This document shows positions 1,528 through 24,109 of a DNA stretch of 37,258 bases, in pieces; the first letter of the stretch is position 1; each line of letters opens with the position of its first letter. The stretch spans positions 1-37,258 of the forward strand of contig DF237005.1 in NCBI GenBank assembly GCA_000708835.1. Reading direction: 5' to 3'. Origin of the DNA: Klebsormidium nitens. Taxonomy: Eukaryota; Plantae; Klebsormidiophyceae. Position numbers and translations under genes: made by a program. Under the pieces are notes generated by a model. The model searched no databases. It was not told the DNA's origin and saw only the letters and a list, made by a program, of their open reading frames with translations.

Positions 1528-2175
1528 TCAAGAAACGTTGCTGATTGGCGCGGACCCCACCTGCGCACCTTCATCTCGGCTCCGTTCCAATACTTCCGGA
1601 GGCTTCCGCAGCGGTTCTGGGTGATCCGACTCCGGCGCACTGGCTGGTTGATCTTTAGACGGACCGACCGGTGACAAGTGGTCGGGATCTGCCCCCGCCG
1701 GTGAGACGGCGCCTGGAGGCATAAACCGGGACACGTCACCGGGGCTCTCGCTAGCTGGTGCCTCCCTAGGGGGTATGACCCGGGACACGTCTTTGTCGGG
1801 ATCTGCCTCGGCTGGTGGATCTGTGGGGGACCGGAACCGGGACACGAGAGTGGGGTGTGTTTTAGCTGGTCCGTCTGCCGGGGAATGGAAGCGGAGAACG
1901 GAACCGAAATCGGAATGTTCTTTGGCTAATTGGTCCCCCTGGGGACGGAACTGGGGAACGGAACGGGAACCGGAATGTTCTTTGGCTGGTTCGTCCCCCG
2001 GGGGACGGAACCGGCCCGCCCAGCCCGTCGTGAGGCCCTGCATTTGGTCGCCGTTCGCCCCGGCCTGGGCTGCCCGGTTGACGAGGCACTTCCGGAAGGA
2101 GAAGTCTTCCGAGGAGCCGTCGGTCCTGAGGACGTGGAAGCACCGGTCGCTTTGGCCCTTCGGGGCGCGGTCGAC
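1528..2175 (-). CDS. NRPD1/NRPE1: Pol IV/V subunit last exon (E22): C-terminal half of DeCL/DUF3223 plus Pro-rich repeat tail
   Basis: Acceptor ttccag|GTCGAC; VDRAPKGQSDRCFHVLRTDGSSEDFSFRKCL matches the DeCL consensus (RCF.V...DG...DFS.RKC); stop TGA at 1528-1530. Confidence 0.88.
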   Translation of the reverse strand, partial: VDRAPKGQSDRCFHVLRTDGSSEDFSFRKCLVNRAAQAGANGDQMQGLTTGWAGRFRPPGDEPAKEHSGSRSVPQFRPQGDQLAKEHSDFGSVLRFHSPADGPAKTHPTLVSRFRSPTDPPAEADPDKDVSRVIPPREAPASESPGDVSRFMPPGAVSPAGADPDHLSPVGPSKDQPASAPESDHPEPLRKPPEVLERSRDEGAQVGSAPISNVS

Positions 2176-5100
2176 CTGGAAGAAGTCAGAGAGAAAGTGC
2201 GGTTTGTGTGACATTTCCGCGACGTTATGCGGTCCATAGGCAGATGTGCAGATATGATACCAGACCCAGTTTAAGTGTACGTTCTCAAACTGCGCTTGCC
2301 TGCAATTTGTTCGCGATATGCAACTGTCAGCCGGCCGTCGTTGCAGAAGAGAATCGGACTTTCAAGCCGTTCCGGCTACATCTTTCACAACTTTCAGAAC
2401 AACCTGGGTAAGAGCCACTTAACTTAGAAAGCTTCAAGTGGGTTGCCCGAGTCGAAATCACAAAGCAACTTGAATTTCAAAAGAGGGGGCCCGAATGCAT
2501 ACGACGCGAGCCTTCGATCGTGAGCCCTATGTAGCCAATTTCCGAACTTATCCTGGGCTCCCTACAATGCCAAATCGACTGATCAATTCCCACCTTGATT
2601 GCCTCGACCCCACACCCAATCTTCTCCGCGGCCTTCTCGTGATACGCCAAAAGCTCCTCAAGCACGAACTGCTGGTCCTCGGGAGACAGCCGCTCGGAGA
2701 TCTCGTACCTGGAGGAAACAACGTAGTAGGCGTGTGAGCCGGTTGTCCCAGGGGAAGCTTGCTGAGGATCAAGAATTGCAAGCGTCGGGGAATCTTGTTA
2801 TGGGATACGTTAAGAGTAATAGAGTCCGAAACAGACTCGTGAGCGTAAACGAGAGTGACGCATCGAAACGCGGAGGTTCCAAGGAACGGATTGAGAGTTG
2901 GTCGACGTCAAGGCAAGATAAGGGGAATTCATTCAGAAACAATCGACAGAGACTTGTAACTCGAGGAGCTCCTCGAGAGAAAGCGTCGATTGGAAAGCAA
3001 GTTTGGAAGTTCGATATAAAGGCCTCTCAATTCAGACCTCTTTCACGATGCTCGAGAGAATCTTAAAAGCCACAGGTCCGCAATTCAGCAGCACTTTGAC
3101 CTTGGGAAACAACTCGCTGATGATTGGACTGCACCCTGACAAGCGTCACAAGCTGGAAGCCACATATGCCGGAATATCTGGGAATTCACTCCAGATTCTG
3201 TGCAAATCTCAACCCTCAGCGAATCAATCAAGCTCTGCGCATGCACGACGCTGCCAGCCATCGACGGCTGTTATTTTGTAATAGCCAAAGCTGCCGAAAG
3301 CTTCTCGAGCGAAGCCGTCTGAAAACGAGATCACACTACGATTTCAACCACCTGTCAGTCTCTCCCCTAAGAGGCACAGCCTCCATTAGCGTTGAATACA
3401 GAGAGCTTTACTTACCGGCGCAGAATCGTGCTTGCCCAGTTCCGTTTCGCCCTCAAATCCGTCACGAGCGGATCATCCTCTGACCCATGCCCAGAGAGCC
3501 TCTCCCGTTTCCCCTCCCTTTCCCCCGGGCGAATCTGCCCCCCCTGCCCCGCCTCATCTCGGCTCGTTTCCTCGGGCCTCTGTCTCTTCTCAGATCTCTC
3601 TTCCGCCGTTCCGGTGAGCCCTTGACCGGAATCTCCTCGTTCTGCTTCAGCTCCTCGCACTCGCTTCCCGTGGTTGTCTCCAACCGAGGCCCCTTTTCGG
3701 GCGACCTCGTCCGTTCTCTCCCACCCGTTTGATTTCCCCTGGTCGCCCTTCCAGGCGCTTCTAATTTCGTCGCCGTCTTTCCCGGTGTCCCACCCGGTAG
3801 CTCCGCCCCCCGTTCCCCATGCCCCCAGGCTCGCCTCCTCTTCCGACGGACCAGTTACTGCCTGCCACGTGGCGTCCTCAGGCGCCGCCCAAACCATCTC
3901 CTCCACTTCTGTCGAAGTCTTCTCCTTCTCGATTATTCGTGACTCGTTTTTCGCTCTCTTCGATTCCCCTTCGTTTTTAAGCTCTGAATTCTGCCCTCCT
4001 TCCGCTGCTCGTTCTTCAGGACCTTCCGGAAAATGCCCCCCCTCTAGTTCTTCGGCACCCCACCCAGCCGGCGACCCCCAACCGCTGCCCGCTTCTTCCT
4101 TAGTACAAGCACCCCGGGCGGTTTCGTCTGGAGCACTCCCTCCGGGAGAAACGACCGGCTGTTGTTCCGCCGCTGCTGAGGCGTGTTCCGGCGGAACGTT
4201 TGGTGGACCAGTCTCGCTCCCTGGCCTTCTCTCGAGACAACTTTCCGGTGTATTCCAACCAGTCCCCGATCTGTTCGCCGGGCTTTTCACTTGATGAGGC
4301 TCGATGGATATGCCCCACCCGGTCGCTCCAACCGGGTTCCCCCACCCACTCTCGTTAGCTGGCCCTCGTTCAAGAGGAGTTTCCACCGACTTCCAGCCAG
4401 TCCCAGCATTGTTTACGGTTTGCGCGGGCTCGGTATTAAGGTTCCAACCGGTCCCTTCAACTGGATCTCCCCAACCAGAGCCAGGATCTTCCTTCCAATT
4501 GGACTTTCCGGCAGCTGCTGACACATCTTCCGGGCTTCTGTTCCGATCACTCTCTTTAGCTGGCCCTCTCTGAAGAGGAGCTTCTGATCCGTTCCAACCA
4601 GTGCCAGACTTGTTTCCCGCTTTCTTAGGCTCCCTGGGAATGTCCCACCCGGTCCCTTCAACCGGTTCGTCCCAGCCGGAGCCAGGGTCTTTGTTCCGGT
4701 CAGATTCCGCCGGAGCGCCCCAGCCGGTGGCAGTCTCCGGGCCGTCGCGGTTGGCCTGGGGCGATGCTGGAGCGCTGGTGTGGGTAGCAGACCAAGGCTG
4801 CTGGACATGGGATGATTGATAAGACGGCCAGAAAGCTCTTCGAGTTTGTTTGATGTCTCGGACCTAGCTTGTGAAAGGTCTAGGATTCAAACAATAGGAA
4901 GGAAGGAAAGCCATCAGTGGTGTGAATGCGATGTTAGCAGGAGCCGTGATGGGTGGGGAAAAAGTCCAGAACCTCGCGAAGGCTTCACCCGTTGTCAAGC
5001 GAGTCTCGAAGATGCTATCAAAAAAATTCAGAACACGGGGACGCTCGTTGACACTTGTCTAACGGCACATGTGACCGTAAAATGCGAGAGCCCTGTTTTG

Positions 5101-8100: not shown

Positions 8101-11100
8101 CATCACAGGGACGTTTAACTGCTAACCAGGCTGATTGCAGGACTTGAGTCTTCGATTTTTCAGCACATAGCCGTTCTAAACCTCGTTGCAAGGCTGGATT
8201 TGACCACCAAAGTCTGGTTGTTAGACATGTATCCACTTTCTAACCATCCAATAACCAGTCGAAAGCTATCCATGGTCAAGGGCCACATACTCCAGTGAAT
8301 CACTGGAAACAAGAACACTCGGCTGTGGCGATGTCTCTCACAAGCAAGAGGCTGGAATTGCCATTCTCGGTTCAAATACCCGTCAAAACGGACTCAAGTA
8401 AGCATTGCAAGGTACTATCAGAACAAGAAGGACGAGCTCTGCGCCAAGCCGCAAAACCTGTCCGTCGATTCCTGCCCAAAGGGTGATGATCAGTTGGTCT
8501 TTCTGATATTCGTGGCGGAGCGCTGTTTGCTTTTTGTCTTCAAGTTTCGTAGATTCTCACCGTTTTGGAGGACTGGAGATGGAGTCTTCCACGGGTTGGG
8601 GTACTTGCGGAAAGTCGACAGAGAACTCCTCTGGAAGCATTTCTTCGGCTCTTTCCGCCAAAGTCTGGAGCTCATATGCGGCCGGCGCGTTGCCGTCGTC
8701 TTTCTGCCGCCGTTTGGCCGCCAGAGTTGACCGCAGGCATTCAGCGACGTGGCCCTGGGAAAGTACCGTGATGTTATGTGATAGAGCACCTTCGATGGCG
8801 AAAGAATTTTGTGAAACCTTTCCGGCAAACTTAAGGTTACCTGCTAAACAGCACCGAAACGACCGTTTTCGCTTGAAGTAGTCGCTGACAAGTTCGGCAG
8901 GGCAATGTATCAACTAGCAGTACGGTGGTATCGACCGTACGGTTGAAAAAGGTCAGCGCCCGGGGGACGGGTGGGGATACTTTAGGGATTTGAGCAAGTC
9001 CCTCAGGAATACTGCAAGCATCCTAGACTTTCTTCATCTCTTCTTCTTTTGGATTTGTCGGATGTCACGCAAGCCTTTCTACTGGAAGTAAATTCACCTG
9101 TGCTCAGATCGAGCGAGCTCCCGACCTTGCGAGGTCTAGGCGGCAATTTCCGTAATGTTTAAATGACCGTAACCCGGTTCTGAAGCCCCCCGCGCCCCGA
9201 TCGCAAAAAATGTCAGAATTGCTCTCTACGGGGCCAGTGGGTCAAGACAGGTCAAGATGGTGTACCTCAGAGAAAGAATTGAAGATCCAAGATGAGTATA
9301 ATCCCCAAGTGACAGAACATCGCGAACCCAAATACTTACCTGCTCCGCAACCCTACCCACCCCTAAAGCCCCAAACGAACCCTTACCGTTCGCTTACCTC
9401 ATTACGTCAACTTGACATCGAGTTTCTTGATTTTGGGTCAAGTGTAGGATAAGCCGAGACAAGAAAGGATTCGATGCGAACTAAGTTAGCAAGAAGGAAG
9501 AGGGGCTGCGCGGTCTTACCGAGTCGCGCAGCTCAAGGATTGCCAGGGCCGGAGCCGCGTTCATATCCAAGACCAGATTTGGGAGCCTAACGCCACGTGT
9601 CGATCCGTCGACCTCTAGCCACGTGTACGACGTCAGTGTCAAGGTGGGACGATCCTCCTTGAGCATGCGCCTGGGTGGAGTAGGCAAAGCATGAGGAGAA
9701 GAGTTTTGAAAACAGCCCAAAAGGTCGGAACTGGCAGACATCGCAGTTTTTCTCCACGCGTTTCAAAGAGAGCGAAGGAAACCGGTGTCAATTGCGTGAA
9801 GAAATCCCTACGGAGATGCGCAAAGTGTAATCTGCGTGCTGAATAGATGATTCAATACCTATCTCTGATGACAGAAGTATTAGTCCACTTAAGCAAACAA
9901 ACCACGATCTATTCCTAATCTTTCAACGCATCCCAGCCTGCTGGAATCAATCAAACCCAGCCCGCTGAATCGATCAAACGTACGGTCTACTCAGACGGCT
10001 CCAGTTGTCGATCGAGGGTACGACTGAGAGACGTTGATTGCTCCTCACACGACGCGCCACGAGGCGACCGCGGCCTCCAAAGAGCGCGGCCGCAGATGCC
10101 GCTCGAAGTGTGCGCACACGCGCGCGCGGAGGGGCGTGAGGAGGGCGCCACGCGCGTCGGGCGGCTGGAGCGCTAGGTTGACGGCTGTGGTCTTCCCTTT
10201 CAGAGGGTCTCGCTTCAAGGTAAGAATATCCTGCAAACAGAATCGGCAAGAAATTTCTCAAAAGTCCGGACACCGGCAAAATATCTTCCATCAAGGTACC
10301 TTTTTGACCAGGACACACCAAAAGTGTAATTTGAGTCATCTTGACTACTCAGCGAGTTCGCAATTCGCAACGTGCACACTCATGAGTCCGATGAGGCCAT
10401 TAAGCTCAAGTAAGGGAAAGTGAAAAGGTAATGATCGGATCAATCTCATCAATCAGTTTGAAGTTTAGAGACACTGCCTTTAAGAGTCGGCCAGATTGAT
10501 ACGCAGATTGCGGCTCCCTTCGTACCACCAGCAAATGTAGAGAAAATAACACCCTGTGCATGCGTGCAGTATTTGGTCGAAACCTGAACCATTCCAAGAC
10601 TGTTCTTGTGAGCGAAAGGAAGAAATCCAATCTCGTTTTCTATTCCTGCTCTCCCAAACGATCGAATTACATCCTAGCGATCATTGCAATATGAACCGCC
10701 AGTACATGAAACACGACGAAATGTGTTTTTACTCGCCTTAACTCGTCGCGCCACGTCTAGTACCCCGCCACCCGGCCGCTTCACCGCGTCCAAAACCCCC
10801 TGCGCCAGCGGCTCCGCGAGCGCGTGCGCGGCCGCGGCTCCGACGGCATCGCCCGCTTCCGGAAAGCCCCACGTCCCTGGAATTCCGTCGTCCCAGGTTC
10901 CTTCCGCCGGAACGTCCGGAATACCGCCAAACGTCGGGTTCTCGTCATCGCACGGGTCCGACTGCATAGGCTCCGTCTCGCATTCCGCTTCCGGTCCAAG
11001 CGGTGACGTCTCTTCCGCTGTAGGGTCACCGAAACTCTTCTCCGTGGGTTCCCCGTCCCCTTTCCCGCCGGAATCCGCGCGCGCCTTTGCGAACTCCCCC

Positions 11101-14100
11101 TCCGTCGTCTGCGCGCCGTCAAAAGGCTGGGTCACTTCGTTGAAGGCCCCCCCGGCATTGCTGACCTCGTCCATTGCCTTCAGTACGTCATCCACTGCAT
11201 CAAGGACGTCAGTCAGCTCATCGCTGACTCCATCCCGGGGGGCGCTTCGAAACTCGTCGCCCTCCGCTCTCTCGGTTCCGCCGCCCCTCATGTTGGACAA
11301 CGCGGAGCCGGAAACCTCTTCGCCGCTCGCTTCGCTCTCTCCATCACTTCCGCTGTTCGGCATCCATTCAGGATCCTCTTCTGAGCTCGAGTTGTCAGAG
11401 GTTTTCCTAAAATTCTTTCGCTTGCGAACCTTGGAAGCGTCCTTTTGCGGCGGACTCGAGTTATCGCCAGAGCCCACACCGCCAGCGACGGAACGCTTTC
11501 GCCTGCGGGTGACTTTCAGGCGGCGCGGCCGCGGCCGCGTTCCGAACGCCCGCACCGGACCTTCCTGCCCTTCGCCTCCTGTTTCCATCTTGGTCACATC
11601 CGACGGGTTTACAGCGTCCACGTCATTCTGCACCATGTTCGTGACGCAAGCGAGCGCTGCCCCAATTGATTGCGATCCGTCGCTCAACTTTTCCGTTTCG
11701 ATCCCCAGGGCGCCGTCAGAGCGGGCGGAAACAGACCCCGGAACGGCCCCCTGTTCGGTCTTTCCACTAGACACTTCTGGCAAATCCTGCTTTCGCTCGT
11801 CTTCGGCGGAGGCAGAGGGAGCTCCACTTCGCAGCGTCTCCGAACCCTGAGCTGCTTCAACCCTCTCCGGGTTAGAAGACTTCTCCTTTTCGCCCCTATC
11901 GCTACTCGCTTTCAAACCAGTCCATCCAGAAGTGGTATTCTTCCATCCGTCTTCGTTCCCATCCCAACCTCTGTCACCTTCTTGGCTCCCCCTCTCACCA
12001 CCGCTCCGGTGCTTATCAGTCTCCTCCCCTCCCTTTTGCGTCTCCATCCCGTCTTCGTCTTCCCCCCACCTCTCGCCAGGAGCATTCTCTTCCTGACCCT
12101 TTCCTTCTTCTGACCCTGAATCCTCGTCGTACCACCATTCCGTTCCAGGGGTAGGAAACTTCTTCCGCTCCAGGCCCAGAAACGGAACCTTCGAGGGCGA
12201 ATCCAGCAGCACTCCCACCCCGCGCGCTCCACGCGCGCGCGCACGTTCCGTCCGCTTGATCGGCTCCGGCTCGGTGCGCGCGCCCACTCTTTTGGAGTAC
12301 TTCGCCCGGGCTCCGTCCCATTCTGTAGAGGGAAACCGAACCACGTGGCCGTCTGCCGACGTCACCATGCCTAGTTCGTCGAAGGTCAAATCGCCCAGAT
12401 GGAACATAAGGTTCTTGCCCTGGAAGGAGAAAAGAGCGATGTCAGATTAGAGCAGAGCCTTAATTACTTTTTCCCCATCTTCCGGGTGCTTGCATGGGGT
12501 TGGCAGAACGAGGAGTCCTGACACTGGAGAAAAGTGGGGAGAATATGGCTCATCAATGATCAAAGAAGGGGCTTTCTCATTGATGAGCCAGATTTTTTTT
12601 CCACCTTGAAGAGAGGAGCGTATTCGAAGCTGACGTGCCCTTCTATTCTAAGCCTGCAACCGTCCCTCTTCAGAACCAGCAACCCTTGGTAGCTTTTGCA
12701 GAGGCAATGCCAGCTTTTCTAAAGATGCAACTTTCTAAAAAGTTTCCGAGCCAATTTTTTTTTTTAACTTTTTGCTTGGCTTGCTTCTCTCCTATGCTGC
12801 ACCCGATGTTCCCTGACGCGACAGGAGCAGAAGATGAATCATCAAGAATGACGCTACAAACTTCCGACGTTTTATTAAGTGGACTGATGAATCTTCTATA
12901 TCAGATCAATTTCGAAATAGAAACACAAATGCAACCAGCTAAGCGAAGCATACCAAGAGAGGATTTAGAGTTCCTCACAATACTGTACGGTAGGTCATTC
13001 CCGGTCCCCTTCAGCACGAGCGAGTGCCGCTCCGCCATCGCCTGGGCGAAGAAGTGGTCCGCGCGCGTGCGCGCGCCGGACACCAGCGGCGTCCGGATGA
13101 ACTTGTGGGCCTCAAAGTACGCGGCCGCGAAGCGCGCCTCTTCCCGATACTGGCGCGCGAAGGCGCCCGGCAGTGCGCGCGCGCTGACCAGCCGCGAGCG
13201 GCCGCGGCTCAGTTCGTCGAAGCGAGAAGCCCACCTGAGGGAAAAGAGAATGTTTTGAATCGCCGAGGTGTTTGCGAAAGGAAAGAAAAGTGTCGGCCTG
13301 TCTTCTTTCTTACACTAAAATGGAGCGTCTCTAAGAAATCAGAAAATCCAACGGGTAATATAGAAGCGCCCCCGGACAATCGACTTTGGAAAACGTGAAG
13401 CTTTCTTGACGCGAAAATCGATCGGAGCTTTTCTGCTTCTTCTATGGCGTGAATCAACAAGAAGAATGAATACAAGATCCTGCCAAGTATCAGATTCCAA
13501 ATGAACTTGGTCAAAATCTGTGCCCAAGAGCTCCGGGCTCCACCGAACCGGAACCCAATCCAGATTGCAAGTTCGACATACCCGTGTCGAATTCTCATTT
13601 CGGCCAGAGCCACCGCTCGGCCACCGCTCGGCGCTAGCAAAAATGCGAATAGAAGATTTTAGGCATTGCTCAGATTGAGTCTAAACCTGATGAAGCGATG
13701 CTTTGAACCATCCCTCTCGTAAATATTCCTCGCCCAATCCTTGTTGGCCTTAATGGTAGCTTTTCAAAGTTTCTGATTTCAAAACGACGCGGATCCTTCA
13801 AGACACCTCACCAGCTTTCGGACGGCAGGTGCGGCAGGAAGCGCTCGGTTTCGAGCATCGGCAGCAGCGCGCGCCCCTCCCACAGCTGGAGGCCCTGTGC
13901 GAGCGCCATCTTCTGCAGATTGGCGGGGGATCCCTTCGACCCTGCTTCGTACAGGGCCCGGAAGGCGTTCCCCGGGGGCACGTGTCGGTTCATAAGCGCC
14001 TGCTCCTCCTTTGCGGCGCGCTGCAGGTATCGACTTGTTACGGAGAATTTTGTTTATCTTCTATATTTGTGCCAAATCCGAAGGGCTCGATTGCATCTCG

Positions 14101-17100
14101 TCAGTACCTCGACCTAATCCAACAGAATTCTCAGGTGCAGCAGTGTTTTCGAGACAGGCATCGCGACAGTGTTGAATGAGAGATGCTGTTGAGATTCAGC
14201 TTGTGTTTGATGAACGATCCGCGAGGCTGAATTGACGTCTTGTAGCAGAAGTTAGGGGGCAAAATACTCCAACATGTATGTATGTGTAAAAATTGCGACC
14301 AATACTTGTTGGAATTTTCACTAACTTATCAATTCTAGGATGCGGAACTTACAAGGAGTTCAGAAGAGAAGCATGTACACAACTGTTGTGTCAGGACTGC
14401 CAGAGATTGCCACTTTTCATCCTTGTCCTGAGGACCAGCGTTCTATCTTCAGAAAGAAACTTCGTCCTTGAATGATGAACATTTCTGACAGAGCGACCAC
14501 ACAATGTTTCTCCTCACCTCGAATACGCGGATCACATCGCTCTGCGCTTCTTCGTCCCTCCGAAGACGGCCCCACCAGTTGGCCCTCCTCTTCACAGGCG
14601 GCCCGTGACATTCTTCTTCCCTGCCGACTTCCTCGCTTGCCGTCCGCTCCGGCGCCTTCCGCTTCCGCCCGCTCCCTTCCGGCGGAACCCCAACCCGGCT
14701 CTCCTCGGCCGACAGCGCACCAGTTGAATTCCATTCCTTTCTTAACCCGTTCTTAACCCACCTCCCTTGACCAATCAGCTTTTTCACCTGTCTCAGATCT
14801 TCCAGCGCGAAGCGCATCCCCGCCCTCTTTCTTCCGGTCACCGCGGCCGCGGCCGCCTTCTCGTCGAGCGCGCGCGCGGGTTGGCGCTTCGGCGCCCGGT
14901 TTTCTCCCCCGGGGATCCGTTCTCCATCCAGTTCCGTTAGCCCCGAACCTTCCTTCGAGGACCCCGTTCCGCCCCAGCCGGTTCCGGTTCCGTCCCATCC
15001 TGTTCCGCCCCAACCGGGCGGGTCCGACCGACCGGTCTGTCTTACTGGCTGGTTATCCTGGTTATCTGCGTCCCCACTCAACCCCCCTAGTGACACACCC
15101 TCTCCCAGGCTGACGTCAGCATCGCCTCCTCTCACGGCATTCAGTACCACTGTGACGTCACCAACGCCGTCTTTGACTTCATCCTGCTCCATCACGGCGT
15201 CAAAATCGGGATCGCTCCACGCCTCTCTCTGCAGCGGATCGTCCTCGGGGGATCCTCCTCCCCGGAGGCGCGCGGGCGCGTCGCTCACGCTCGCGGCCCC
15301 GCTCGCGTCAGGCGGCGCGGCCCCGTCCGAGCTTTCGCTGTCAAGCACCGTCCGCTTCCGCTTCCGCCGCGGAACGGACTCCCTCCTCGCGCCCGGCTTG
15401 CGCGCTTCCCTCGCCTCTAGTTCCTGACGCAAGCGTTCGCCAAGATCGCCCGTGTCCGCATGCATGACCGATTCCGGTTCCGGTTCCGCCGCGCTCATCT
15501 TCACGACGCAGCGGATCGCTATGCGCAACGCCCGCATGCGAATCTGCTCAAATTTGTTTTGTGCCCGGTTGGAAGAACCGGGGGCGCGGCTCGGCGTGAT
15601 CAGCAGGTCCTCGAGGCCTAGGCTGAAGCCCCGGTTGTCCAGGAAGACTCGGGTAAAATGCGTAGCCGCGTCAAGGAAGCGCACCGCGGCCGCGGCGCCG
15701 TACCTGGGGCAAAAGATTGCAATCATCCGGTCATCAAAATGGGTGTCGGAATCAAGGCTCGGGAAATGCACATTCATTGAGTCTGAGTGTTGTTTGTACG
15801 GACCAGAGTCGAAAGTTTGGTTAATTGAAGTTTCCAGCACCGTAGACTGCCTGGATTGGACACGCGTGTCGTACATCCAGTGATAAGCATGAGATGACAA
15901 GATGCTCAGAGGGTTGACGGCAGAAAGTTTCAGAAGGAAAGCGGAAGCTACGATTGCTTGTCAAAGGGCAAGACAGGAAGGAACGTATCCAGTCAGGCAA
16001 AGCGGTGAAAGTCGTAAACTTCTGACTCGAAGCATAGTACTCGCGGCGGTCTGTTTCTATCTGATTCGTTCTGCTGAAGAACTTTTTCTTTGCTCCCGGA
16101 TCCAAAATGCCCTGAAAGTGCTTTAATTTTGAATTGCCTCGAGCTGCGTGGACAAAAAGAGTAAGCACGCTTTAACTTCAGAAGCCTTATATAAACAGTA
16201 CGAACTAAACTCCCATGAACACATTACGAAACGCCGGTAGGAGAAAGCTTCCTAATACCTACTCTCTAGAGTGGGTTTCCCATCTTGATTGAATCTAACA
16301 GGCTCTGTGCTCAAAAGCGCAATCCCAAGCCCAGGCAAACCAACTTCAGAAACACCTTTTTGGTAGATACTTTCTGTGCAATCTTCAAAAAGGGTTCTTG
16401 TCAGGGCGACCATCAAGTCGCTCACATTCTCCACAGGGTCGCCACGAGGCCGTCCGGCGCCTCCCCTAGCCACGTGGCGCCCATCCGTGCGCCGTAGAAT
16501 TCCGCCCGTCCCCTCGCGATCCGGACGCCGTCTTCTTCGCTAGCGTACGTAAAGCCGTCCGGAAGCGCGGCGCATAGGATCTGGTCCGCGGTGTAAACAG
16601 GCTCCCCGTCGAGCTTTCGTCTAGCGGGGGGATCCGGAAGCAGCGTTTGCTCCCCCCCATCCGCTTCAGTTCCGGTTGGGGGGTCAAATTGCAGCCGTTT
16701 TTTCGACCCCCCACTGCGAGAAGCTTCGTCCGGTATGCCCACAACAAGCTGGCAGGCGTCCGCACGGGTGAAGTCAACCGGGGCCCCCTTTCTGCCTGAC
16801 GTCAGCATGAGGAACACGCCCAACCTGGAGTCCTGCCACAGGGCAACGAGCGCCTGGCCCTTTTGCGTAGACGTGACGTTGGCTGACGTCAGCAGGAGCT
16901 CCTGCGCCTCGGCGCACGCTTCCGGCCCTTGCGGCACGTGAAGGTTCATCTGCGAGTGAGCGTCGAACAACGCTGTTAGATGCTTTCTTTGGAGCAAATG
17001 AAAGCAAAAGAAGTGGGTGAGCATTGGGATGACTTGCAGTGAACTCGCTCGACCACGTTCACACGAGAGCACCGGTTTTAAACTCCGCTTCCGATAGACC

Positions 17101-20100
17101 CTGACCCCCGGTTCTCGCTCCGTGCACCCGCTTTGAATGAGCGACTCTGTTCAAACCCCTCCACGGTACCTTACTACGGAGCTTGTTATGTATGCTCGTT
17201 TTAACCGCGCATTTGCGCAAGCTGCCGGTTTGGAGACATGAGGAGACAGAAAGCCAAATGACTAAGTTAGTCAAGTCTCAACACACATAGCGACAACTAA
17301 CTTGGACTTCGGATGGAGAAAGACTCTCACCTCCTCTATCAATCTAGAACCAGCAGCTTGCTCGGAAGGCTCAGCTAATGCACTTTTTATTTTGTTTTGA
17401 TGCGGGTCACTTGTAATTCATCTATGTTTCTGGCGCCCCAGTCAGCTTTGAAGACCACCGTCGTTTCATGTGCTGAGTCTGACCTATGAAACTACGAGAA
17501 GATTCAGGACGCTCACAGGTTGGAGATGCCCTCAGAGTCTGACTTTCTCAGACCGAAACTTTCTCACACTTTCTCACAGGCCTTTTTGGAGGCGAAGTCA
17601 GTGGCGCTCACCTCATCTCCGTCAAAGTCGCCGTTGCACGCGTGGCAGAGCGGCAGCGGCAACCCAATGGTTTTGCAGTCGGTTAGCTTGACCCGGCTTG
17701 CTAACAGATTGTGCTGCCGGACCGACGGGTTGCGGTTCCACAAGACCAGGTCCCCTTCCGTCAGCAACCTTTCAATGACGTCACCCACTCGCAGCTCGAA
17801 CTGCCCCGGGCTGACGAGGGCGACTTTCCGCCACGTTCCGTTCCGCCGGAACTGGACGATCTGCCCGTCGAACGGACGGACCGGCCTGTTGGGCGCCCGT
17901 GCTTTCTCCCGCTTCTCTTCTTCTTGCACTCTTTCTTCTCCACGTGATCCTTTCTTGGCGACACCTTCCCCTTGCATTCCTCTCTGCGAGTCGCCCCAAA
18001 CCCCAGGCGCCTCGAACTTTGCCCTCGTCTTTCCCCATCCATCTTCACCGCTTCTCTCATTCCTTTCAGCAACCAACTTCTCTTCTTCCACACCCCAACC
18101 GGTTGCCTCTTCTCCTTCACCGGGCGCTTCTTCCTGCCAATTGCTTACGTCATCCGGGTTACTGACGTCATCTCGAGCCACTGCCGCGCCCCAAGCGCCC
18201 GGTTCACCCCAACCGGTCGCCCCTCCCTTATCTTCACCCATACTCTTTCCCGCACTTCCTTGGTTGGTCTCATTTTGTGCGCAGTCAATGTCTTTTTGCT
18301 CCTCTATGTGTTCTTCAATCGGTTCACGGGCTCCTGGACGCTCCGCTTCAGTTGGATTCGCTCCACCTTCCGGGTCGTTGAAGTCCGTTTCCTGCCAGCC
18401 CGTTCCGCTCCGTTCCGTTTTCCAGGCCGTTCCTTCCGCTGCAGCTTCCGAATAACCCCTTCTTCCCCTCCCACTTTCAACCTCCATCCTGTCCACTGGT
18501 TTTTGGGGACTTTCCGTTGTGTCTCCGTCAGCAGAATCAGCCTCCTTCATGCAGTCAACATTACCCCATCCAGACCCTCCGCCCCACACTGGCTGGCTTT
18601 CGAGATCGGCGTTCCGTTTAGTTTCCGTTCCGCTCTTCCGCTGCTCGTCCATCCCTGCCTCGACAGAACGCTGCTTCCCCGCATCGCCCACGCCGCCCCA
18701 CCCTGTTCCGCCGCCCCATCCCAGCTGGCTTCCGGTGTCCTGATTCCGTTCCGTTCCCTGTCCTCCGTTCCGCTGCTCCTCTATGACTACGTCACCTGAA
18801 CGCTGCTTCTCCGCACCGCCCACATCACCCCAACGAGTTCCCCCGTCCCCTTCCGGCTGGGTTCCGGTGTCATCATTCCGTTGGTTTCCCGTTCCGTTCC
18901 GCTGCTTTTCTAGTCTTACTTCATCGGAACTCTGCTTCTCCGCACCGCCCACTTCGCCACAACCATTCCCTCCGCCCCACCCTTCCACCTCCGGCTGTGT
19001 TCCATCAATCTCTTTCCGCTGCATCTCCGTCCTTCCGTTCCGCTGGCCTGCCGCTTTCTCCTCCCCAGCTCCCCAGCCCCTATCGCTCTGCCGACGAGTC
19101 CTTTGGTTCTGATCGCCTTCCGATTCTCTACCGGTCTCAAATGCCTCTCCCGCCCTAGTTGCAGTCCCATCATTTGACGGGCCCTCGGTTGCATCTTCCG
19201 GGCACTCTTTCAACGGCTCGTCTCTCTCCAGGAGTCCTCGGGCGGCTCGAATTGATCGCTCGAAAATTCCCTGCAGCCTCGGCAGGTTCAACGACGTCAC
19301 CCTCTCCGTTTTTCTGAGGCCCATCTCCCGGGGGACTTCGACCGCGGTCACGCTGACGTCAGCGGCGGGCGAGATAACGCTGCGGCCGCTGTAGTCGCTC
19401 CGTTTGCCCTTGAGGAGCGCCACGTGGCCCTCTTTCGGCTCTTTGGGCGGCTGGATCAGGTCGAGGATGCCCCGGTCTTTCTTGGTGGGCGCTCGGGCCT
19501 GCATTAGAATCCGAGCTTCAGTTTCTTTCTGCTCCGAGGAGGACTGGTGTACTGATTCTGAAGGTGTTTCAGAGAACCCGGTTTGGAAGGCGCAGGTATG
19601 TATCTCTGAAGCTTTGACCCCTTGACCACGATTGGTCTAAGGGAATCAGAAATAAATCACGTTTCGTTTGTAGAAAAAGTTCTTAATGCACGTCTCTTCG
19701 GGTGTCCGCCAATGCAAGTAGCGACTGCCCGGCGTCTGACGGAACCTGCCGGACCGTCGGTCACACGGTCGGGAAAGACAGATGATGAACAAGAGCCAGA
19801 AGGTGGATCGCCGAGTATCAGAAAAAGTTTTGACGAGCGGACTTGGCTCGCAAAAGAAAAGTACAATCGGAATCCACTGAGGGGCTTGTGAATGTGAGCG
19901 GATCTGTCACGAGCACCATGTTCCCTTCTCTAGTGGTTCTTCCACAAGGGCTTAGCTTGCTTCGAACAACATCCTGAACAAACGATCCATCATGTTTGCC
20001 GCTATTCCGGCGCGCTGCTCTGTCTGAAGGTGCGTGCCAACTCTTCGTTAAATTCCATCAGCTGCGGACACAAGTACAGCTCTGTTCAAACCCCGACAAG

Positions 20101-23100: not shown

Positions 23101-24109
23101 GGGGTTTTCATAGAGTACACGGATACGAGCTCAAGTAGACTGGATTTGCACTCCATATAAATCTTGTATCGGTTAGGAAACCGTGGGCGTTGAAATGGAT
23201 TCAAACAATCTCCTTCAAACGAGATATCGGCCGAACGTGAGGGACCAAGAAAAGGACGGTAGGCATTTTACCCGGGCAGTTGCTCTCAGCCGTTGACGGG
23301 TCAGCTTTGCCGTCGCACGTGCCGCAGGTACCCTTCTGCTTTAAAGACACCCCAAGACGGGGGTCGCTCAAGTCAGCAGCGTCTCGGATCTCGAGTATCG
23401 ATAGTTGCTGCAAAACACCAACATGCGATGGGGGTTTTTTGGCGAAGGAAAGAAAATGAGGCAAGGTCTGAGGCTCAAGCTCGAAAAAAGCGGGCAGTCT
23501 TTTCTGCTCGAACGAGTCTGTGAACCAAGGGAAACTGAAGCCTGGCTAGAAACGGCGCATCTGTGGAGGCGTTTAACCGGGTTCTTGAGAAGGCCCCTCG
23601 AGAGCTCTATACTGATGCCACGCCCAAAATGGAAAAGCGTTGAGTGATCTGGCCCACCTCGAAGCTAGTATCCTCTCATGAATTTGATTGAAAACACGTC
23701 CAAAACCTGATGTCAGAATCTTCCGCAGAATATCTCCCTGACCTAAGAAGATTGGATTCTAAACCATCTTTACCAGTGTTCCGGTCCAGAATGATCATAA
23801 ATCTCAGGTGCCCACTTTATCCTTTTCACTGTTCATTCCGAAACACAACCCAGAACTTGAATTGAGCAGTAAAGTTCAGAACTTGACGAACCCTATGAGT
23901 TGAGGCTCTTCCTGCTGAGTGGTCTACGCGACAAAGACTTTCTCCGATCAACCGCTTGTCGGTGAAGCGAAGGAGTACTCAAAATGAGGGGAAGCGAAGC
24001 AAAGTTTGAGACCCCTAGTTTTTGAGCCTTAAAGCGAAGTGCTCACTCGAAGCTCCTGGTCTCCCATCAGCCCGAACTCAATGCTCTGTACGGTGCCCAC
24101 TTCGGCCAT
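1528..24109 (-). CDS. NRPD1/NRPE1: RNA polymerase IV/V-type largest subunit (RPB1-derived), spliced gene, at least 3,510 aa
   Basis: Exons join in frame across canonical splice sites: 24047-24109, 23272-23407, 22673-22791, 21719-21964, [unresolved 21045-21718], 20889-21044, 20180-20356, 17612-19498, 16426-16949, 14518-15703, 13812-14020, 12979-13234, 10737-12419, 10049-10230, 9520-9670, 8561-8754, 7878-8026, 6785-7350, 6082-6255, 5179-5505, 3416-4800, 2594-2708, 1528-2175. RPB1-family motifs appear in order: LSDPRLG..CGTC..CPGHWGHIEL, FCVNC, RPEWL..VPPP, GKRSDYSGRSVISP, NRNPS, NGDFDGDEMNLHVPQ, AGSKGS, AGDAVG..AEP, LGIEAA, HLELVADKMT, GTG. These are followed by a GW/WG CTD and DeCL, with no YSPTSPS heptads. 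Confidence 0.92.
1672..2013 (-). repeat. Six degenerate 18-20 aa coding repeats (RF.PP.D.PA...(D)VS) after DeCL
   Basis: Units: RFRPPGDEPAKEHSGSRSVP / QFRPQGDQLAKEHSDFGSVL / RFHSPADGPAKTHPTLVS / RFRSPTDPPAEADPDKDVS / RVIPPREAPASESPGDVS / RFMPPGAVSPAGADPDHLS. Confidence 0.8.
2594..2708 (-). CDS. NRPD1/NRPE1: Pol IV/V subunit exon E21: DeCL domain core
   Basis: cctccag|G TAC...ATC AAG|gtggga; (R)YEISERLSPEDQQFVLEELLAYHEKAAEKIGCGVEAIK, typical DeCL (D..FVLE.LL.YH....K.G.GV..I.V). Confidence 0.9.
3416..4800 (-). CDS. NRPD1/NRPE1: Pol IV/V subunit exon E20: GW/WG-rich CTD (AGO-hook) and start of DeCL
   Basis: Open frame from acceptor tccag|CAG to CG|gtaag; 15 GW/WG motifs by manual count; ends DPLVTDLRAKRNWASTILRR and splices in frame to E21. 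Confidence 0.88.
4207..4689 (-). repeat. Three ~47 aa CTD repeats, each with three GW motifs
   Basis: DPGSGWDEPVEGTGWDIPREPKKAGNKSGTGWNGSEAPLQRGPAKES / DPGSGWGDPVEGTGWNLNTEPAQTVNNAGTGWKSVETPLERGPANES / GWGNPVGATGWGISIEPHQVKSPANRSGTGWNTPESCLERRPGSETG. Confidence 0.85.
5179..5505 (-). CDS. NRPD1/NRPE1: Pol IV/V subunit exon E19 (region H, end of catalytic core)
   Basis: ttgcag|AAT...CAT|gtaaga; APKILTDAAYAGQRDALTQPSARAGLGLPVASGTGGGFALL aligns to RPB1 region H (..L..AA.....D.......I..G....GTG.F.L). Confidence 0.88.
6082..6255 (-). CDS. NRPD1/NRPE1: Pol IV/V subunit exon E18
   Basis: ttcag|GAT...GAG|gtgagg; DLQEVYGDKVDRKHLELVADKMTASGKVLSLNMNGYK matches V..RHL.L..D.MT..G....N..G. Confidence 0.9.
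6785..7350 (-). CDS. NRPD1/NRPE1: Pol IV/V subunit exon E17
   Basis: ttgccag|GG TCT...GAG|gtgagg; GSSWVASAT..LTVTVE..LQTEG..MDPFRS..DVAESLGIEAA; contains a ~60 aa Gly/acidic insert (about 6920-7099). Confidence 0.85.
7878..8026 (-). CDS. NRPD1/NRPE1: Pol IV/V subunit exon E16
   Basis: ttgtag|G...GGA G|gttggc; RRNQALVDDPRRLVVRALLGWWTRKDAPFDKRMERFESKVREVLETNIG; phases fit both neighbours. Confidence 0.75.
8561..8754 (-). CDS. NRPD1/NRPE1: Pol IV/V subunit exon E15
   Basis: ttcccag|GGC CAC...AAA CG|gtgaga; GHVAECLRSTLAAKRR...; phase 0 in, phase 2 out as required. Confidence 0.75.
9520..9670 (-). CDS. NRPD1/NRPE1: Pol IV/V subunit exon E14
   Basis: cacccag|G CGC...TCG|gtaaga; RMLKEDRPTLTLTSYTWLEVDGSTRGVRLPNLVLDMNAAPALAILELRDS; supported by phase continuity, weak homology. 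Confidence 0.7.
10049..10230 (-). CDS. NRPD1/NRPE1: Pol IV/V subunit exon E13
   Basis: ttgcag|GAT...GT|gtgagg; DILTLKRDPLKGKTTAVNLAL...HLRPRSLEAAVASWRV. Confidence 0.8.
10737..12419 (-). CDS. NRPD1/NRPE1: Pol IV/V subunit exon E12: bridge-helix C-terminus, ~490 aa foot-position insert, degenerate trigger loop
   Basis: cttccag|GGC AAG AAC CTT ATG; KNLMFHLGDLTFDELGMVTSADGHVVRF...AGDAVGAAAAHALAEPLAQGVLDA...VK; donor is AAG|gcgagt (GC-AG). Confidence 0.85.
12546..12590. repeat. Perfect 14-bp intronic inverted repeat (hairpin)
   Basis: TGGCTCATCAATGA (12546-12559) and TCATTGATGAGCCA (12577-12590); AAAG/CTTT can extend the stem. Confidence 0.85.
12979..13234 (-). CDS. NRPD1/NRPE1: Pol IV/V subunit exon E11 (region F, bridge helix N-terminus)
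   Basis: ccctcag|G TGG...ATT|gtgagg; ...HKFIRTPLVSGARTRADHFFAQAMAERHSLVLKGTGNDLPYSI. Confidence 0.82.
13812..14020 (-). CDS. NRPD1/NRPE1: Pol IV/V subunit exon E10 (funnel, GSKGS)
   Basis: cctgcag|CGC...TG|gtgagg; NAFRALYEAGSKGSPANLQKMALAQGLQLWEG...RFLPHL matches RPB1 NN...M..aGSKGS..N..Q....GQQ..EG...R.LPHF. Confidence 0.9.
14518..15703 (-). CDS. NRPD1/NRPE1: Pol IV/V subunit exon E9 (region E plus ~310 aa funnel insert)
   Basis: gccccag|G TAC...GAG|gtgagg; YGAAAAVRFLDAATHFTRVFLDNRGFSLGLEDL, then a low-complexity insert, then EEAQSDVIRVFE. Confidence 0.87.
16426..16949 (-). CDS. NRPD1/NRPE1: Pol IV/V subunit exon E8 (pore)
   Basis: ctcgcag|ATG AAC CTT CAC...AT|gtgagc; MNLHVPQGPEACAEAQELL...QDSRLG...TADQILCAALP...GLVATLWR. 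Confidence 0.9.
17612..19498 (-). CDS. NRPD1/NRPE1: Pol IV/V subunit exon E7: region C, dock domain with ~450 aa GW/WG insert, Metal A site
   Basis: aatgcag|GCC...GAG|gtgagc; GKRSDYSGRSVISP..VEVP..ERVTSLNLPRL [insert] LRVGDVIERLLTEGDLVLWNRNPS...NGDFDGDE. Confidence 0.93.
18554..19045 (-). repeat. Four 43-47 aa tandem coding repeats (last one partial) with WG motifs inside the dock insert
   Basis: QRNGRTEMQRKEIDGTQPEVEGWGGGNGCGEVGGAEKQSSDEVRLEK / QRNGTGNQRNDDTGTQPEGDGGTRWGDVGGAEKQRSGDVVIEE / QRNGGQGTERNQDTGSQLGWGGGTGWGGVGDAGKQRSVEAGMDE / QRKSGTETKRNADLESQPVWGGGSGWGNVD. Confidence 0.88.
20180..20356 (-). CDS. NRPD1/NRPE1: Pol IV/V subunit exon E6 (clamp coiled coil)
   Basis: gattcag|GAC...AAG|gtgcgg; DHITRCLRSILAANKKLKQ matches RPB1 DDLT..L..I...N..L. 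Confidence 0.88.
20889..21044 (-). CDS. NRPD1/NRPE1: Pol IV/V subunit exon E5 (region B); 5' boundary uncertain
   Basis: VQRLFKKITDEEW...RPEWLVHSVLLVPPPHLR; donor GTG|gtaagc. The exon may extend upstream to about 21105 (RDLLLPLQ). Confidence 0.8.
21719..21964 (-). CDS. NRPD1/NRPE1: Pol IV/V subunit exon E4 (clamp head, CAVC zinc ligands)
   Basis: atgcag|CCG...GCG|gtaagc; ...LCAVCKKRADVEFRED; the donor choice is uncertain. Confidence 0.7.
22673..22791 (-). CDS. NRPD1/NRPE1: Pol IV/V subunit exon E3
   Basis: ttcgcag|GA CAC TGG; GHWGHIELVFPVFFPHLIPKVTQVLLSFCVNC matches GHFGHIEL..PVFH......L...C..C. Confidence 0.9.
23272..23407 (-). CDS. NRPD1/NRPE1: Pol IV/V subunit exon E2 (region A zinc site)
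   Basis: ttgcag|CAA...CCG G|gtaaaa; LSDPRLGV..CGTCDG...CPG. Confidence 0.9.
24047..24109 (-). CDS. NRPD1/NRPE1: Pol IV/V subunit first coding exon E1
   Basis: ATG at 24109; MAEVGTVQSIEFGLMGDQELR|gtgagc matches the RPB1-family N-terminus (V..I.FG.....E.R). It is too short to appear in the ORF track. Confidence 0.85.

What the first reader, a model, noticed from the sequence alone, without database searches (positions are those of the whole stretch)
1528..24109. Giant Pol IV/V largest subunit with Argonaute-hook-like motifs distributed over the enzyme core, not only the CTD
The spliced protein is at least 3,510 aa, versus about 1,450 (NRPD1) and 2,000 (NRPE1) in Arabidopsis. The extra length is mostly three low-complexity inserts in the dock, funnel and foot positions. 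Manual GW/WG counts are 13 (dock), 4 (funnel), 5 (foot) and 15 (CTD), so 22 of 37 lie inside the catalytic core. In flowering plants the AGO4-binding GW/WG platform of Pol V is in the NRPE1 CTD. Inference: this alga builds a multi-site AGO scaffold around the polymerase, possibly an alternative early form of RdDM coupling. Charophyte Pol IV/V-like subunits are known in general; I cannot check whether these core inserts have been described.
Basis: partly seen in the sequence, partly recalled or inferred. Interest (0 to 1): 0.92.

Follow-up and report, generated by a model that had tools for sequence, protein, structure and literature searches.

The report
Giant Pol V-like subunit, internal hooks
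A 22.6-kb, 21-exon gene encodes a roughly 3,400-residue largest subunit of a plant-type silencing RNA polymerase (Pol IV/V family); its extra length is three disordered inserts in the enzyme core, and the dock insert carries conserved Argonaute-hook (GW/WG) motifs as densely as the C-terminal tail, where such hooks are normally found.

Summary
A minus-strand gene runs from the ATG at 24109 to the stop at 1528-1530. My model has 21 exons, all with GT-AG introns, and encodes 3,427 aa. It carries Rpb1 domains 1-5, an intact DFDGD metal site, no heptad tail, a GW-rich C-terminal region and a split DUF3223/DeCL domain. That combination is the signature of the Pol IV/V largest subunit, in its NRPE1-like form. 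Three low-complexity inserts (dock 446 aa, funnel 318 aa, foot position 485 aa) are exonic. They are in frame with conserved flanks, have exon-like GC (0.59-0.66, introns 0.48), and align to the closest relative with in-frame indels and dN/dS of 0.4-0.6, whereas introns do not align. Enrichment over composition is significant only for the dock insert and the tail, both at 2.9 hooks per 100 aa against 0.15 in the core. The dock platform is repeat-built and present in all four related genomes. The funnel and foot clusters are small and lineage-variable, but their tryptophans are conserved in the closest relative. Argonaute binding, transcript structure and the organism remain untested. This is a new variant of a known kind: published work looked for hooks only downstream of the catalytic core.

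The parts
1528..24109 (-). Whole gene: 21 exons, 3,427 codons plus stop. Exons (high-low): 24109-24047, 23407-23272, 22791-22673, 21964-21719, 21044-20889, 20356-20180, 19498-17612, 16949-16426, 15703-14518, 14020-13812, 13234-12979, 12419-10743, 9612-9520, 8754-8561, 8026-7878, 7350-6785, 6255-6082, 5505-5179, 4797-3416, 2708-2594, 2175-1528.
   Evidence: Splice-site enumeration guided by conservation. The assembled CDS has one stop and all introns are GT-AG, 381-1130 nt long. Exons are colinear with related loci. A few junctions (exons 3/4, 4/5, 12/13, 15/16, 18/19) are ambiguous by tens of residues.
17612..19498 (-). Exon 7 (629 aa): active-site region flanking the dock insert.
   Evidence: Pfam RNA_pol_Rpb1_2, E 1.3e-21. 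The flanks align to mammalian RPB1 328-409 and 434-502.
17882..19219 (-). Dock insert (aa 393-838, 446 aa): G/E-rich, 3.4% Trp, 13 GW/WG hooks.
   Evidence: The insert is homologous in P0001, P0002 and P0003. dN/dS against L001 is 0.49, with flanks at 0.12-0.15. No secondary structure is predicted, but the model is poor.
18666..18987 (-). 132-nt (44-aa) tandem repeat, 2.5 copies, inside the dock insert. Each unit carries one or two hooks.
   Evidence: TRF. A repeat-copy difference against L001 is visible in the alignment.
17615..17629 (-). Metal A site DFDGD (aa 923-927, context CNGDFDGDEMN across the exon 7/8 junction).
14542..15495 (-). Funnel insert (aa 1173-1490, 318 aa). It contains the hook cluster PGWGGTGWDGTGTGWGG (14974-15012), a PRRKRKR basic patch and an RLRGGG motif.
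   Evidence: It lies between the end of Pfam Rpb1_3 and position 28 of Rpb1_4. dN/dS is 0.40 and 5 of 6 aligned Trp are conserved against L001.
10869..12323 (-). [quoted passage not shown] Hook cluster at 11922-12068.
   Evidence: No Pfam domain is found in the 590-aa frame. dN/dS is 0.59 and 9 of 10 aligned Trp are conserved against L018. Length varies from about 110 aa in L004 to about 620 aa in L002/L003.
3416..4797 (-). Exon 19: C-terminal GW/WG platform (15 hooks, three degenerate repeats of about 50-65 aa).
   Evidence: 18 of 20 aligned Trp are conserved against L018 at 53% overall identity.
2594..2708 (-). DeCL/DUF3223 domain, first half (exon 20).
   Evidence: Pfam PF11523, E 1.4e-11, profile positions 6-51.
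2083..2175 (-). DeCL/DUF3223 domain, second half (start of exon 21).
   Evidence: Pfam PF11523, E 8e-11, profile positions 41-75. The same two-exon arrangement occurs in L003 and L018.
1528..2082 (-). Pro/Ser-rich tail after DeCL, with a 60-nt x 2.2 repeat (1878-2011), then the stop codon.

Best explanation
This is the gene for the largest subunit of a Pol IV/V-type (NRPD1/NRPE1 family, NRPE1-like) nuclear RNA polymerase. Shown: the catalytic core is very divergent but keeps the metal A site. Shown: the tail is not a heptad CTD. It is a tryptophan-rich GW/WG region followed by a DeCL domain. Shown: three surface positions of the core carry long, translated, low-complexity segments, namely the dock, the funnel, and the place where Pol II has its foot. 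Inferred: these segments are disordered, and the dock segment is a second Argonaute-binding platform. It is built like the tail platform, from degenerate tandem repeats with Trp in [ST]GW[GDNQ] contexts. Inferred from Pol II/Pol V structural knowledge: the dock lies beside the RNA exit channel, on the same face from which the C-terminal linker leaves the enzyme. Dock and tail hooks together would then hold several small-RNA-loaded Argonautes where the nascent transcript emerges. In flowering plants, that position is filled in part by the separate elongation factor SPT5L/KTF1. The small funnel and foot hook clusters may add valency in this species and its closest relative, but they are not a conserved feature of the lineage.
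For: Family: Pfam Rpb1_1 to Rpb1_5 and DUF3223 are found on colinear exons. DFDGD is present, and there are no heptads and no C[KR]YC motif. Bridge helix and trigger loop are visibly degenerate in the model protein, as described for NRPD1/NRPE1 and charophyte homologues in PMC11194755.
Inserts are coding: they are open and in frame with conserved flanks. GC is 0.59-0.66 against 0.48 in introns. blastn aligns the dock and funnel inserts to L001 at 75-78%, like the core exons, and aligns no intron. In the dock and funnel protein alignments the gaps against L001 are whole codons in a continuous frame, and dN/dS is 0.49 (dock), 0.40 (funnel), 0.59 (foot) and 0.61 (tail).
Hook platform: dock density is 2.91 per 100 aa, the tail 2.87 and the core 0.15. 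Enrichment exceeds all 5000 shuffles. The dock insert has a 44-aa tandem repeat. Dock hooks are present in all four relatives, at 13, 9, 7 and 5. Across dock, funnel, foot and tail, 42 of 50 aligned Trp are conserved against about 58% background identity (binomial 8e-5).
Position: the flanks map to mammalian RPB1 409/434.
[quoted passage not shown] SPT5L probably arose only in angiosperms (PMC10991848).
Against: There is no transcript evidence and no binding data. Funnel and foot hooks are not enriched over composition. They are absent or sparse in the more distant relatives, and L004 shows frame breaks inside its dock and funnel inserts. Trp conservation in the dock insert alone is not significant (10/14, p = 0.23). 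The inserts share no detectable sequence similarity with the tail platform. The core phylogeny is unresolved: the stem branch is long (1.37), and the constraints with the RPB1-side rows and with the RPC1-like clade are both accepted. The AlphaFold model of exon 7 was uninformative (pLDDT 34). The organism was not identified.
Confidence: 0.6

Rival explanations
1. The inserts are translated, fast-evolving disordered 'bloat' produced by repeat expansion. The GW/WG dipeptides are a by-product of Gly-rich, Trp-containing repeats, and only the tail, if anything, binds Argonaute.
For: Funnel and foot hook counts fall within the shuffle range. Insert length and hook number vary widely between relatives, and the foot insert is about 110 aa in L004. 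dN/dS of 0.4-0.6 indicates weak constraint. The jaw region also has an acidic low-complexity stretch with no hooks.
Against: Disordered regions are normally Trp-poor (general knowledge). The dock insert has 3.4% Trp, and 13 of its 15 Trp touch Gly. Its density equals that of the tail platform. Hooks persist in all four relatives while the surrounding sequence diverges to about 40% identity. Trp is preferentially conserved.
Confidence: 0.25
2. The Trp motifs are functional but bind something other than Argonaute, for example a deadenylase-type partner as in GW182, or they act as stickers for condensate formation.
For: PMC10991848 notes that hook domains can attract other proteins and may drive phase separation. 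The funnel insert also carries a fully conserved basic patch and an RLRGGG motif, which points to other functions in these segments.
Against: The same protein has the canonical NRPE1 arrangement (GW platform between the core and DeCL), whose partner in plants is AGO4 (PMC4476159). The dock hooks share the [ST]GWG context of the tail hooks.
Confidence: 0.12
3. Gene-model artefact: the long open frames are wholly or partly intronic or alternatively spliced, and the real protein is of ordinary Pol IV/V size.
For: There are no expression data. In L004 the dock and funnel inserts are interrupted by frame breaks. PMC11194755 reports that predicted models of these genes are often partial and differ from cDNA.
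Against: Conserved core sequence lies in the same frame on both sides of the dock and foot inserts, and on the upstream side of the funnel insert, with no stop for 318-485 codons. Composition is exon-like. The inserts align between species while real introns do not. dN/dS is below 1 and gaps keep the frame.
Confidence: 0.07
4. It is not a Pol IV/V subunit but a divergent paralogue of another class (Pol I, Pol III or virus-derived) that happens to sit next to a DeCL gene.
For: Single exons score as well or better against archaeal Rpo1N and RPC1 than against NRPD1/NRPE1 in the PDB. The tree does not resolve the class.
Against: The DeCL exons are spliceable in frame through strong canonical sites. 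The junction (…ILRR | Y.. ERLSPED…) is conserved in L003 and L018. A GW platform plus DeCL after the last core domain is the NRPE1 architecture. The protein lies outside the well-supported RPC1-like clade (100 SH-aLRT). Forcing it onto the RPB1 side raised the likelihood more (+18.2) than forcing it with RPC1 (+10.4).
Confidence: 0.04

Closest known systems
Single-copy NRPD1/NRPE1 homologues of charophytic green algae (Chakraborty, Trujillo, Kendall and Mosher 2024, PMC11194755)
   Same: Pol II-derived largest subunit with DFDGD retained, degenerate bridge helix and trigger loop, no heptads, and AGO hooks between the catalytic region and a DeCL domain.
   Different: [quoted passage not shown] This gene has a 446-aa hook-dense insert in the dock, a 318-aa funnel insert, and a 485-aa low-complexity segment where the foot is missing. 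A second compact paralogue also appears to exist in a close relative. Whether the published algal genes carry such inserts could not be checked here.
Arabidopsis NRPE1 (Pol V largest subunit; PDB 8HYJ)
   Same: Domain order: core, then GW/WG platform of degenerate repeats, then DeCL. The hook platform is labile and disordered.
   Different: NRPE1 is 1,976 aa with hooks in the C-terminal region only. This protein has about 3,430 aa, and 22 of its 37 insert-plus-tail hooks lie in inserts within the core.
[quoted passage not shown]
   Same: By inference, a hook platform held next to the RNA exit channel (KOW5 binds there; PMC10533338).
   Different: SPT5L is a separate protein that probably arose in angiosperms (PMC10991848). 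Here the platform is built into the polymerase subunit. There is no sequence relationship.
GW182/TNRC6 and other GW-type Argonaute-binding proteins
   Same: Disordered, Gly/Ser-rich regions with multiple Trp that fit the PIWI-domain pockets. Two or three Trp suffice per Argonaute (cited in PMC10991848).
   Different: They are unrelated proteins. The resemblance lies in motif and composition only, and binding was not tested here.

Membership tests
Pol IV/V largest subunit (NRPD1/NRPE1 family) | Multisubunit RNA polymerase largest-subunit core (Rpb1 domains 1-5) in order | tested here: met
   Pfam hits to Rpb1_1, _2, _3 (weak), _4 and _5 on colinear minus-strand exons.
Pol IV/V largest subunit (NRPD1/NRPE1 family) | Metal A site DFDGD retained, with relaxed flanking pattern | tested here: met
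   CNGDFDGDEMN at aa 920-930: Gly replaces the Ala of NADFDGDEMN. The L002 and L004 relatives keep NADFDGDE.
Pol IV/V largest subunit (NRPD1/NRPE1 family) | C-terminal DeCL (DUF3223) domain fused to the polymerase | tested here: met
   PF11523 split over exons 20 and 21 (E 1e-11 and 8e-11). The exons join the tail exon in frame through canonical sites. The same arrangement occurs in L003 and L018. The fusion at mRNA level is inferred.
Pol IV/V largest subunit (NRPD1/NRPE1 family) | No YSPTSPS heptad CTD | tested here: met
   Zero heptad-like matches in the model protein.
Pol IV/V largest subunit (NRPD1/NRPE1 family) | Degenerate bridge helix and trigger loop | tested here: met
   The bridge region reads FFAQAMAERHSLVLKGTGNDLPYSIGKNLMFHLGDL and the trigger loop GDAVGAAAAHALAEPLAQGVLDAVKRPG. 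The canonical Pol II motifs used for comparison are recalled from established knowledge, so this is a qualitative test.
Pol IV/V largest subunit (NRPD1/NRPE1 family) | Loss of the foot domain (about 190 aa) just upstream of the trigger loop | tested here: inconclusive
   No foot-type Pfam domain is detected in the 590-aa frame, so the fold seems absent. The position is nevertheless occupied by 485 aa of low-complexity sequence rather than being shortened. It shrinks to about 110 aa in L004.
Pol IV/V largest subunit (NRPD1/NRPE1 family) | Phylogenetic position with NRPD1/NRPE1, derived from NRPB1 | tested here: inconclusive
   No NRPD1/NRPE1 reference sequences could be obtained. Among 64 generic largest subunits, the lineage sits on a long branch outside the RPC1-like clade. 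Constraints to either side are not rejected.
NRPE1-type (Pol V-like) rather than NRPD1-type | GW/WG platform between the last catalytic domain and DeCL; no C[KR]YC NRPD1 motif | tested here: met
   15 hooks in 523 aa. No C[KR]YC motif.
Argonaute-hook (GW/WG) platform: dock insert | Trp next to Gly in small or polar context, within low-complexity sequence poor in hydrophobic residues | tested here: met
   13 of 15 Trp touch Gly. Contexts are [TSEDLR]GWG and the like. ILVFMYC fraction is 0.10 against 0.29 in the core.
Argonaute-hook (GW/WG) platform: dock insert | Enrichment beyond composition, and a repeat-based build | tested here: met
   13 hooks against 4.6 +/- 1.8 in shuffles, maximum 11 of 5000. 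44-aa tandem repeat.
Argonaute-hook (GW/WG) platform: dock insert | Hooks retained across species while the surrounding sequence turns over | tested here: met
   13, 9, 7 and 5 hooks in four relatives, at 67-40% identity over the exon.
Argonaute-hook (GW/WG) platform: funnel and foot inserts | Enrichment beyond composition and retention across species | tested here: not met
   Hook counts are within the shuffle range. L004 has no funnel hooks, and the L002/L003 foot has two to four hooks in about 620 aa. Against the closest relative the Trp are conserved, 5/6 and 9/10.
Argonaute-hook (GW/WG) platform: all regions | Trp-dependent binding to an Argonaute PIWI domain | not testable with these tools
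   Needs pull-down or co-IP with W-to-A controls.

The most novel reading that the evidence does not exclude
This lineage has two Pol IV/V-type largest subunits. One is the giant NRPE1-like enzyme studied here, whose dock-inserted hook platform does the job that the separate factor SPT5L does in flowering plants. The other is a compact paralogue with the foot simply deleted and few or no hooks (P0101/L016-L017 in the same sequencing run as the closest orthologue; P0113/L019 in another run). If so, a Pol IV-like/Pol V-like division of labour, or an independent duplication, would exist outside the land-plant NRPD1/NRPE1 split, contrary to the single-copy picture for charophytes.
Probability: 0.25. 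Interest if true: 0.8.

Novelty: new variant of a known kind. Interest (0 to 1): 0.6.

Why it matters
Pol V recruits small-RNA-loaded Argonaute through hooks on its C-terminal tail and on accessory factors. How that coupling began is an open question in the evolution of RNA-directed DNA methylation. A polymerase that carries a conserved hook platform inside its core would show that the position of the platform is evolutionarily free. By inference, that platform lies at the point where the transcript leaves the enzyme. It would be a built-in equivalent of SPT5L in a lineage that lacks it. It also provides defined segments (dock, funnel, foot, tail) whose Argonaute binding can be compared directly. 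The possible second paralogue bears on when Pol IV-like and Pol V-like functions separated.

Tried and rejected
- **Class from PDB scores.** I used exon pieces and two four-species profiles. Only the universal motifs match. Archaeal, Pol III, Pol II and Pol IV chains score alike, so this does not discriminate.
- **Core phylogeny.** The tree used 64 generic largest subunits from the representative search. The branch is long and unresolved, and no NRPD1/NRPE1 references were reachable, because the length filter of the word-indexed search excludes full-length proteins when the query is a single exon.
- **AlphaFold2 of exon 7.** Run with a four-row alignment. pLDDT was 34 everywhere, so it is useless as a disorder test.
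- **Metagenome scan.** Run with the exon 8 profile. It returned only generic polymerases matching the first 50-70 residues.
- **Identifying the organism.** I tried the conserved upstream neighbour, sample accessions in the literature, and Rfam and tRNA scans. None gave anything.
- **Dock insert as a copy of the tail platform.** Local alignment scores are no better than shuffles, so this idea is rejected.
- **Pfam on neighbouring ORFs**: no hits.

Full report
**What is there**

The window is eukaryotic DNA with 48-58% GC. On the minus strand, four very long stop-free frames stand out (17567-19636, 14452-15960, 10677-12446, 3415-4863). They are linked by shorter open segments that carry recognisable polymerase motifs. 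Pfam finds RNA_pol_Rpb1 domains 1, 2, 3 (weak), 4 and 5 in order, and DUF3223 (the DeCL domain) split across the last two coding segments.

I enumerated GT-AG introns between conserved blocks and obtained a 21-exon model. It runs from the ATG at 24109 to the stop at 1528-1530, with introns of 381-1130 nt and one uninterrupted reading frame of 3,427 codons. A few junctions are ambiguous by tens of residues.

**Family**

The protein keeps the metal A site (CNGDFDGDEMN). It has no heptad repeats and no C[KR]YC motif. Its bridge helix and trigger loop are degenerate. Its tail is a tryptophan-rich GW/WG region followed by DeCL. This is the architecture of NRPE1 and of the single NRPD1/NRPE1 homologue described in charophytic green algae (PMC11194755; PMC4476159).

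Similarity scores do not decide the class. Individual exons hit archaeal Rpo1N, RPC1, RPB1 and NRPD1 about equally.

A tree with 64 generic largest subunits puts the lineage on a long stem (1.37 changes per site), outside a well-supported RPC1-like clade. Forcing it onto the RPB1 side raised the likelihood by 18.2 units, and forcing it with RPC1 by 10.4. Neither constraint is rejected. I could not obtain NRPD1/NRPE1 reference sequences, so the assignment rests on the DeCL fusion and the tail.

**Are the inserts translated?**

Relative to other polymerases, three segments are extra:
- aa 393-838, between the parts of exon 7 that align to mammalian RPB1 residues 328-409 and 434-502. By recalled Pol II nomenclature this is the dock.
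- aa 1173-1490, between the end of Pfam domain 3 and position 28 of domain 4, the funnel.

Several lines of evidence say they are exonic:
- The dock and foot inserts lie in the same open frame as conserved sequence on both sides. The funnel insert does so on its upstream side and ends at a canonical donor site. At the stop density of this gene's introns (0.040 per codon), the chance of such openness is 1e-8 to 2e-6.
- Their GC is 0.59-0.66. Core exons are 0.64 and introns 0.48.
- A search of 1.84 billion representative proteins with exon 7 found three unnamed relatives whose match runs through the insert (P0001 66% identity, P0002 43%, P0003). Everything else matched only the flanks.
- Their contigs are colinear with the window, including a divergently transcribed upstream neighbour.
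- The contigs are L001 and L018 from one sequencing run, and L002/L003 and L004 from two JGI metagenomes.
- Against the closest relative (synonymous divergence about 0.5), blastn aligns core exons and the dock and funnel inserts at 72-84%, but aligns no intron. L001 ends inside the funnel insert, so the foot insert was compared with L018 at the codon level.
- The dock and funnel protein alignments run in a continuous frame with whole-codon gaps, one of which is a repeat-copy difference.
- dN/dS is 0.49 (dock, flanks 0.12-0.15), 0.40 (funnel), 0.59 (foot) and 0.61 (tail).

One caveat: L004 shows frame breaks inside its dock and funnel inserts. These could be assembly errors, small introns or decay.

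**The hooks**

| Region | Hooks per 100 aa |
|---|---|
| Dock insert | 2.91 |
| Tail | 2.87 |
| Funnel insert | 1.26 |
| Foot insert | 0.82 |
| Jaw low-complexity stretch | 0 |
| Core | 0.15 |

Residue shuffles show enrichment beyond composition for the dock (13 against 4.6 +/- 1.8, never reached in 5000 shuffles) and the tail (15 against 6.0 +/- 2.1, never reached). They do not for the funnel or foot taken alone.

The dock insert is built from a 44-aa tandem repeat with one or two hooks per unit. Its hooks share the [ST]GWG context of the tail. It has no detectable sequence similarity to the tail beyond composition.

Dock hooks are present in all four relatives (13, 9, 7, 5), while the exon diverges to about 40% identity.

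The funnel cluster (PGWGGTGWDGTGTGWGG) has counterparts in L001 and L002 but not in L004. The foot cluster is conserved and even larger in L018. It is nearly absent from L002/L003, and the whole foot insert is only about 110 aa in L004.

Between the window and its closest relative, aligned tryptophans are conserved 10/14 (dock), 5/6 (funnel), 9/10 (foot) and 18/20 (tail). That is 42 of 50 against about 58% background identity (binomial 8e-5; 24/30 for the three inserts alone, p = 0.017).

**How it probably works**

Shown: the gene encodes an NRPE1-like subunit with a second hook-dense, repeat-built, conserved low-complexity platform in the dock, plus smaller lineage-variable clusters in the funnel and foot inserts.

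Inferred: the platform binds Argonaute through its tryptophans, as NRPE1 and SPT5L do (PMC4476159; PMC10533338). [quoted passage not shown] The two platforms would therefore concentrate Argonaute-small RNA complexes where the transcript emerges.

In flowering plants SPT5L/KTF1 places its hooks there through KOW5. SPT5L probably arose only in angiosperms (PMC10991848). A built-in dock platform would be a functional analogue.

The funnel insert sits at the rim of the secondary channel, where RDR2 docks on Pol IV. It also carries a fully conserved PRRKRKR patch and an RLRGGG motif. The role of these is unknown.

**Comparison with what is known**

Charophyte NRPD1/NRPE1 homologues with tail hooks and DeCL are published. 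[quoted passage not shown] My literature searches found no description of hook platforms inside the core. I therefore rate this a new variant of a known kind.

I could not identify the organism. The only relatives are unnamed contigs, and searches by neighbour gene or sample accession gave nothing. 'Alga' therefore remains an inference from the family and from composition.

**An unexpected extra**

The same sequencing run that holds the closest orthologue also holds a second, compact polymerase gene (P0101; L016/L017). It has these features:
- Rpb1 domains and an AADFDGD metal site.
- A dock insert of about 65 aa with two hooks (KPGWGGESGWDG).
- No funnel insert, and only about 25 aa before the trigger loop.
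- Lineage-specific similarity to exon 8 of the window gene.

It groups with the window lineage (SH-aLRT 100). That result is biased, because its pieces were picked by similarity and the branches are long.

A homologue without any dock insert occurs in another run (P0113/L019). No DeCL was seen before the contig ends, and its class is undetermined. If both genes belong to one genome, this lineage has two atypical largest subunits.

**Verdict**

Noticed in passing
L016:50-13200 and L017 (Logan SRR23617307_410831); L019 (SRR23617210): A second, compact, divergent RNA polymerase largest-subunit gene sits in the same run as the closest orthologue. It has an AADFDGD metal site, a dock insert of about 65 aa with two GW hooks, no funnel insert, and the foot simply missing. 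It groups with the window lineage in a biased tree. A homologue in another run has no dock insert at all. It may be a Pol IV-like partner of the giant gene.
   Followed up: partly
window 15180-15260 (funnel insert) and 11200-11260 (foot insert); L001, L002, L004 equivalents: A ubiquitin-tail-like motif recurs in the funnel insert of all four species and in the foot insert (ARLRGGGSPEDD, RRLRGGGENESE, and NMRGGG/RLRGG in the foot). It is duplicated in L001. Next to it, the basic patch SVPRRKRKRTVLDSESSDG is identical in the window and L001, and may be a nuclear localisation signal.
   Followed up: no
window 25734-28388 (+): A divergently transcribed upstream neighbour gene. At least four exons are conserved at 65-90% amino-acid identity in L001 and L002, so synteny is conserved. 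There is no Pfam match, and the only database relatives are the same unnamed contigs.
   Followed up: partly
L004:9854-10040 and 13434-13627: In one relative the dock and funnel inserts are not continuous open frames. There is a stop, a 1-nt gap relative to L002, and overlapping frames. Assembly error, small introns or decay could not be told apart.
   Followed up: partly
L018:9025-11154: In the closest relative, the intron between the last core exon and the tail exon is open in frame. Domain H and the GW platform therefore lie in one 710-codon frame. In the window the corresponding 381-nt intron contains stops.
   Followed up: no
window 1531-2082 (-): After the DeCL domain there is a Pro/Ser-rich tail of about 180 aa, with a 20-aa repeat (60 nt x 2.2 at 1878-2011; units such as RFRPPGDEPAKEHSGSRSVPQ). 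I know of no such tail in NRPE1.
   Followed up: no
window 30473-31150 (-) and 33484-34368 (+): A Pro/Thr-rich open frame that resembles a hydroxyproline-rich glycoprotein, and a Cys-rich 294-aa open frame. Neither has a Pfam match.
   Followed up: partly
L017:14634-16289: Downstream of the compact paralogue lies a 552-codon open frame with two C-X2-C-X18-C-X2-C motifs and a weak Pfam GATA hit (E 4e-4). It is unclear whether it is a separate gene or part of that polymerase's tail.
   Followed up: partly
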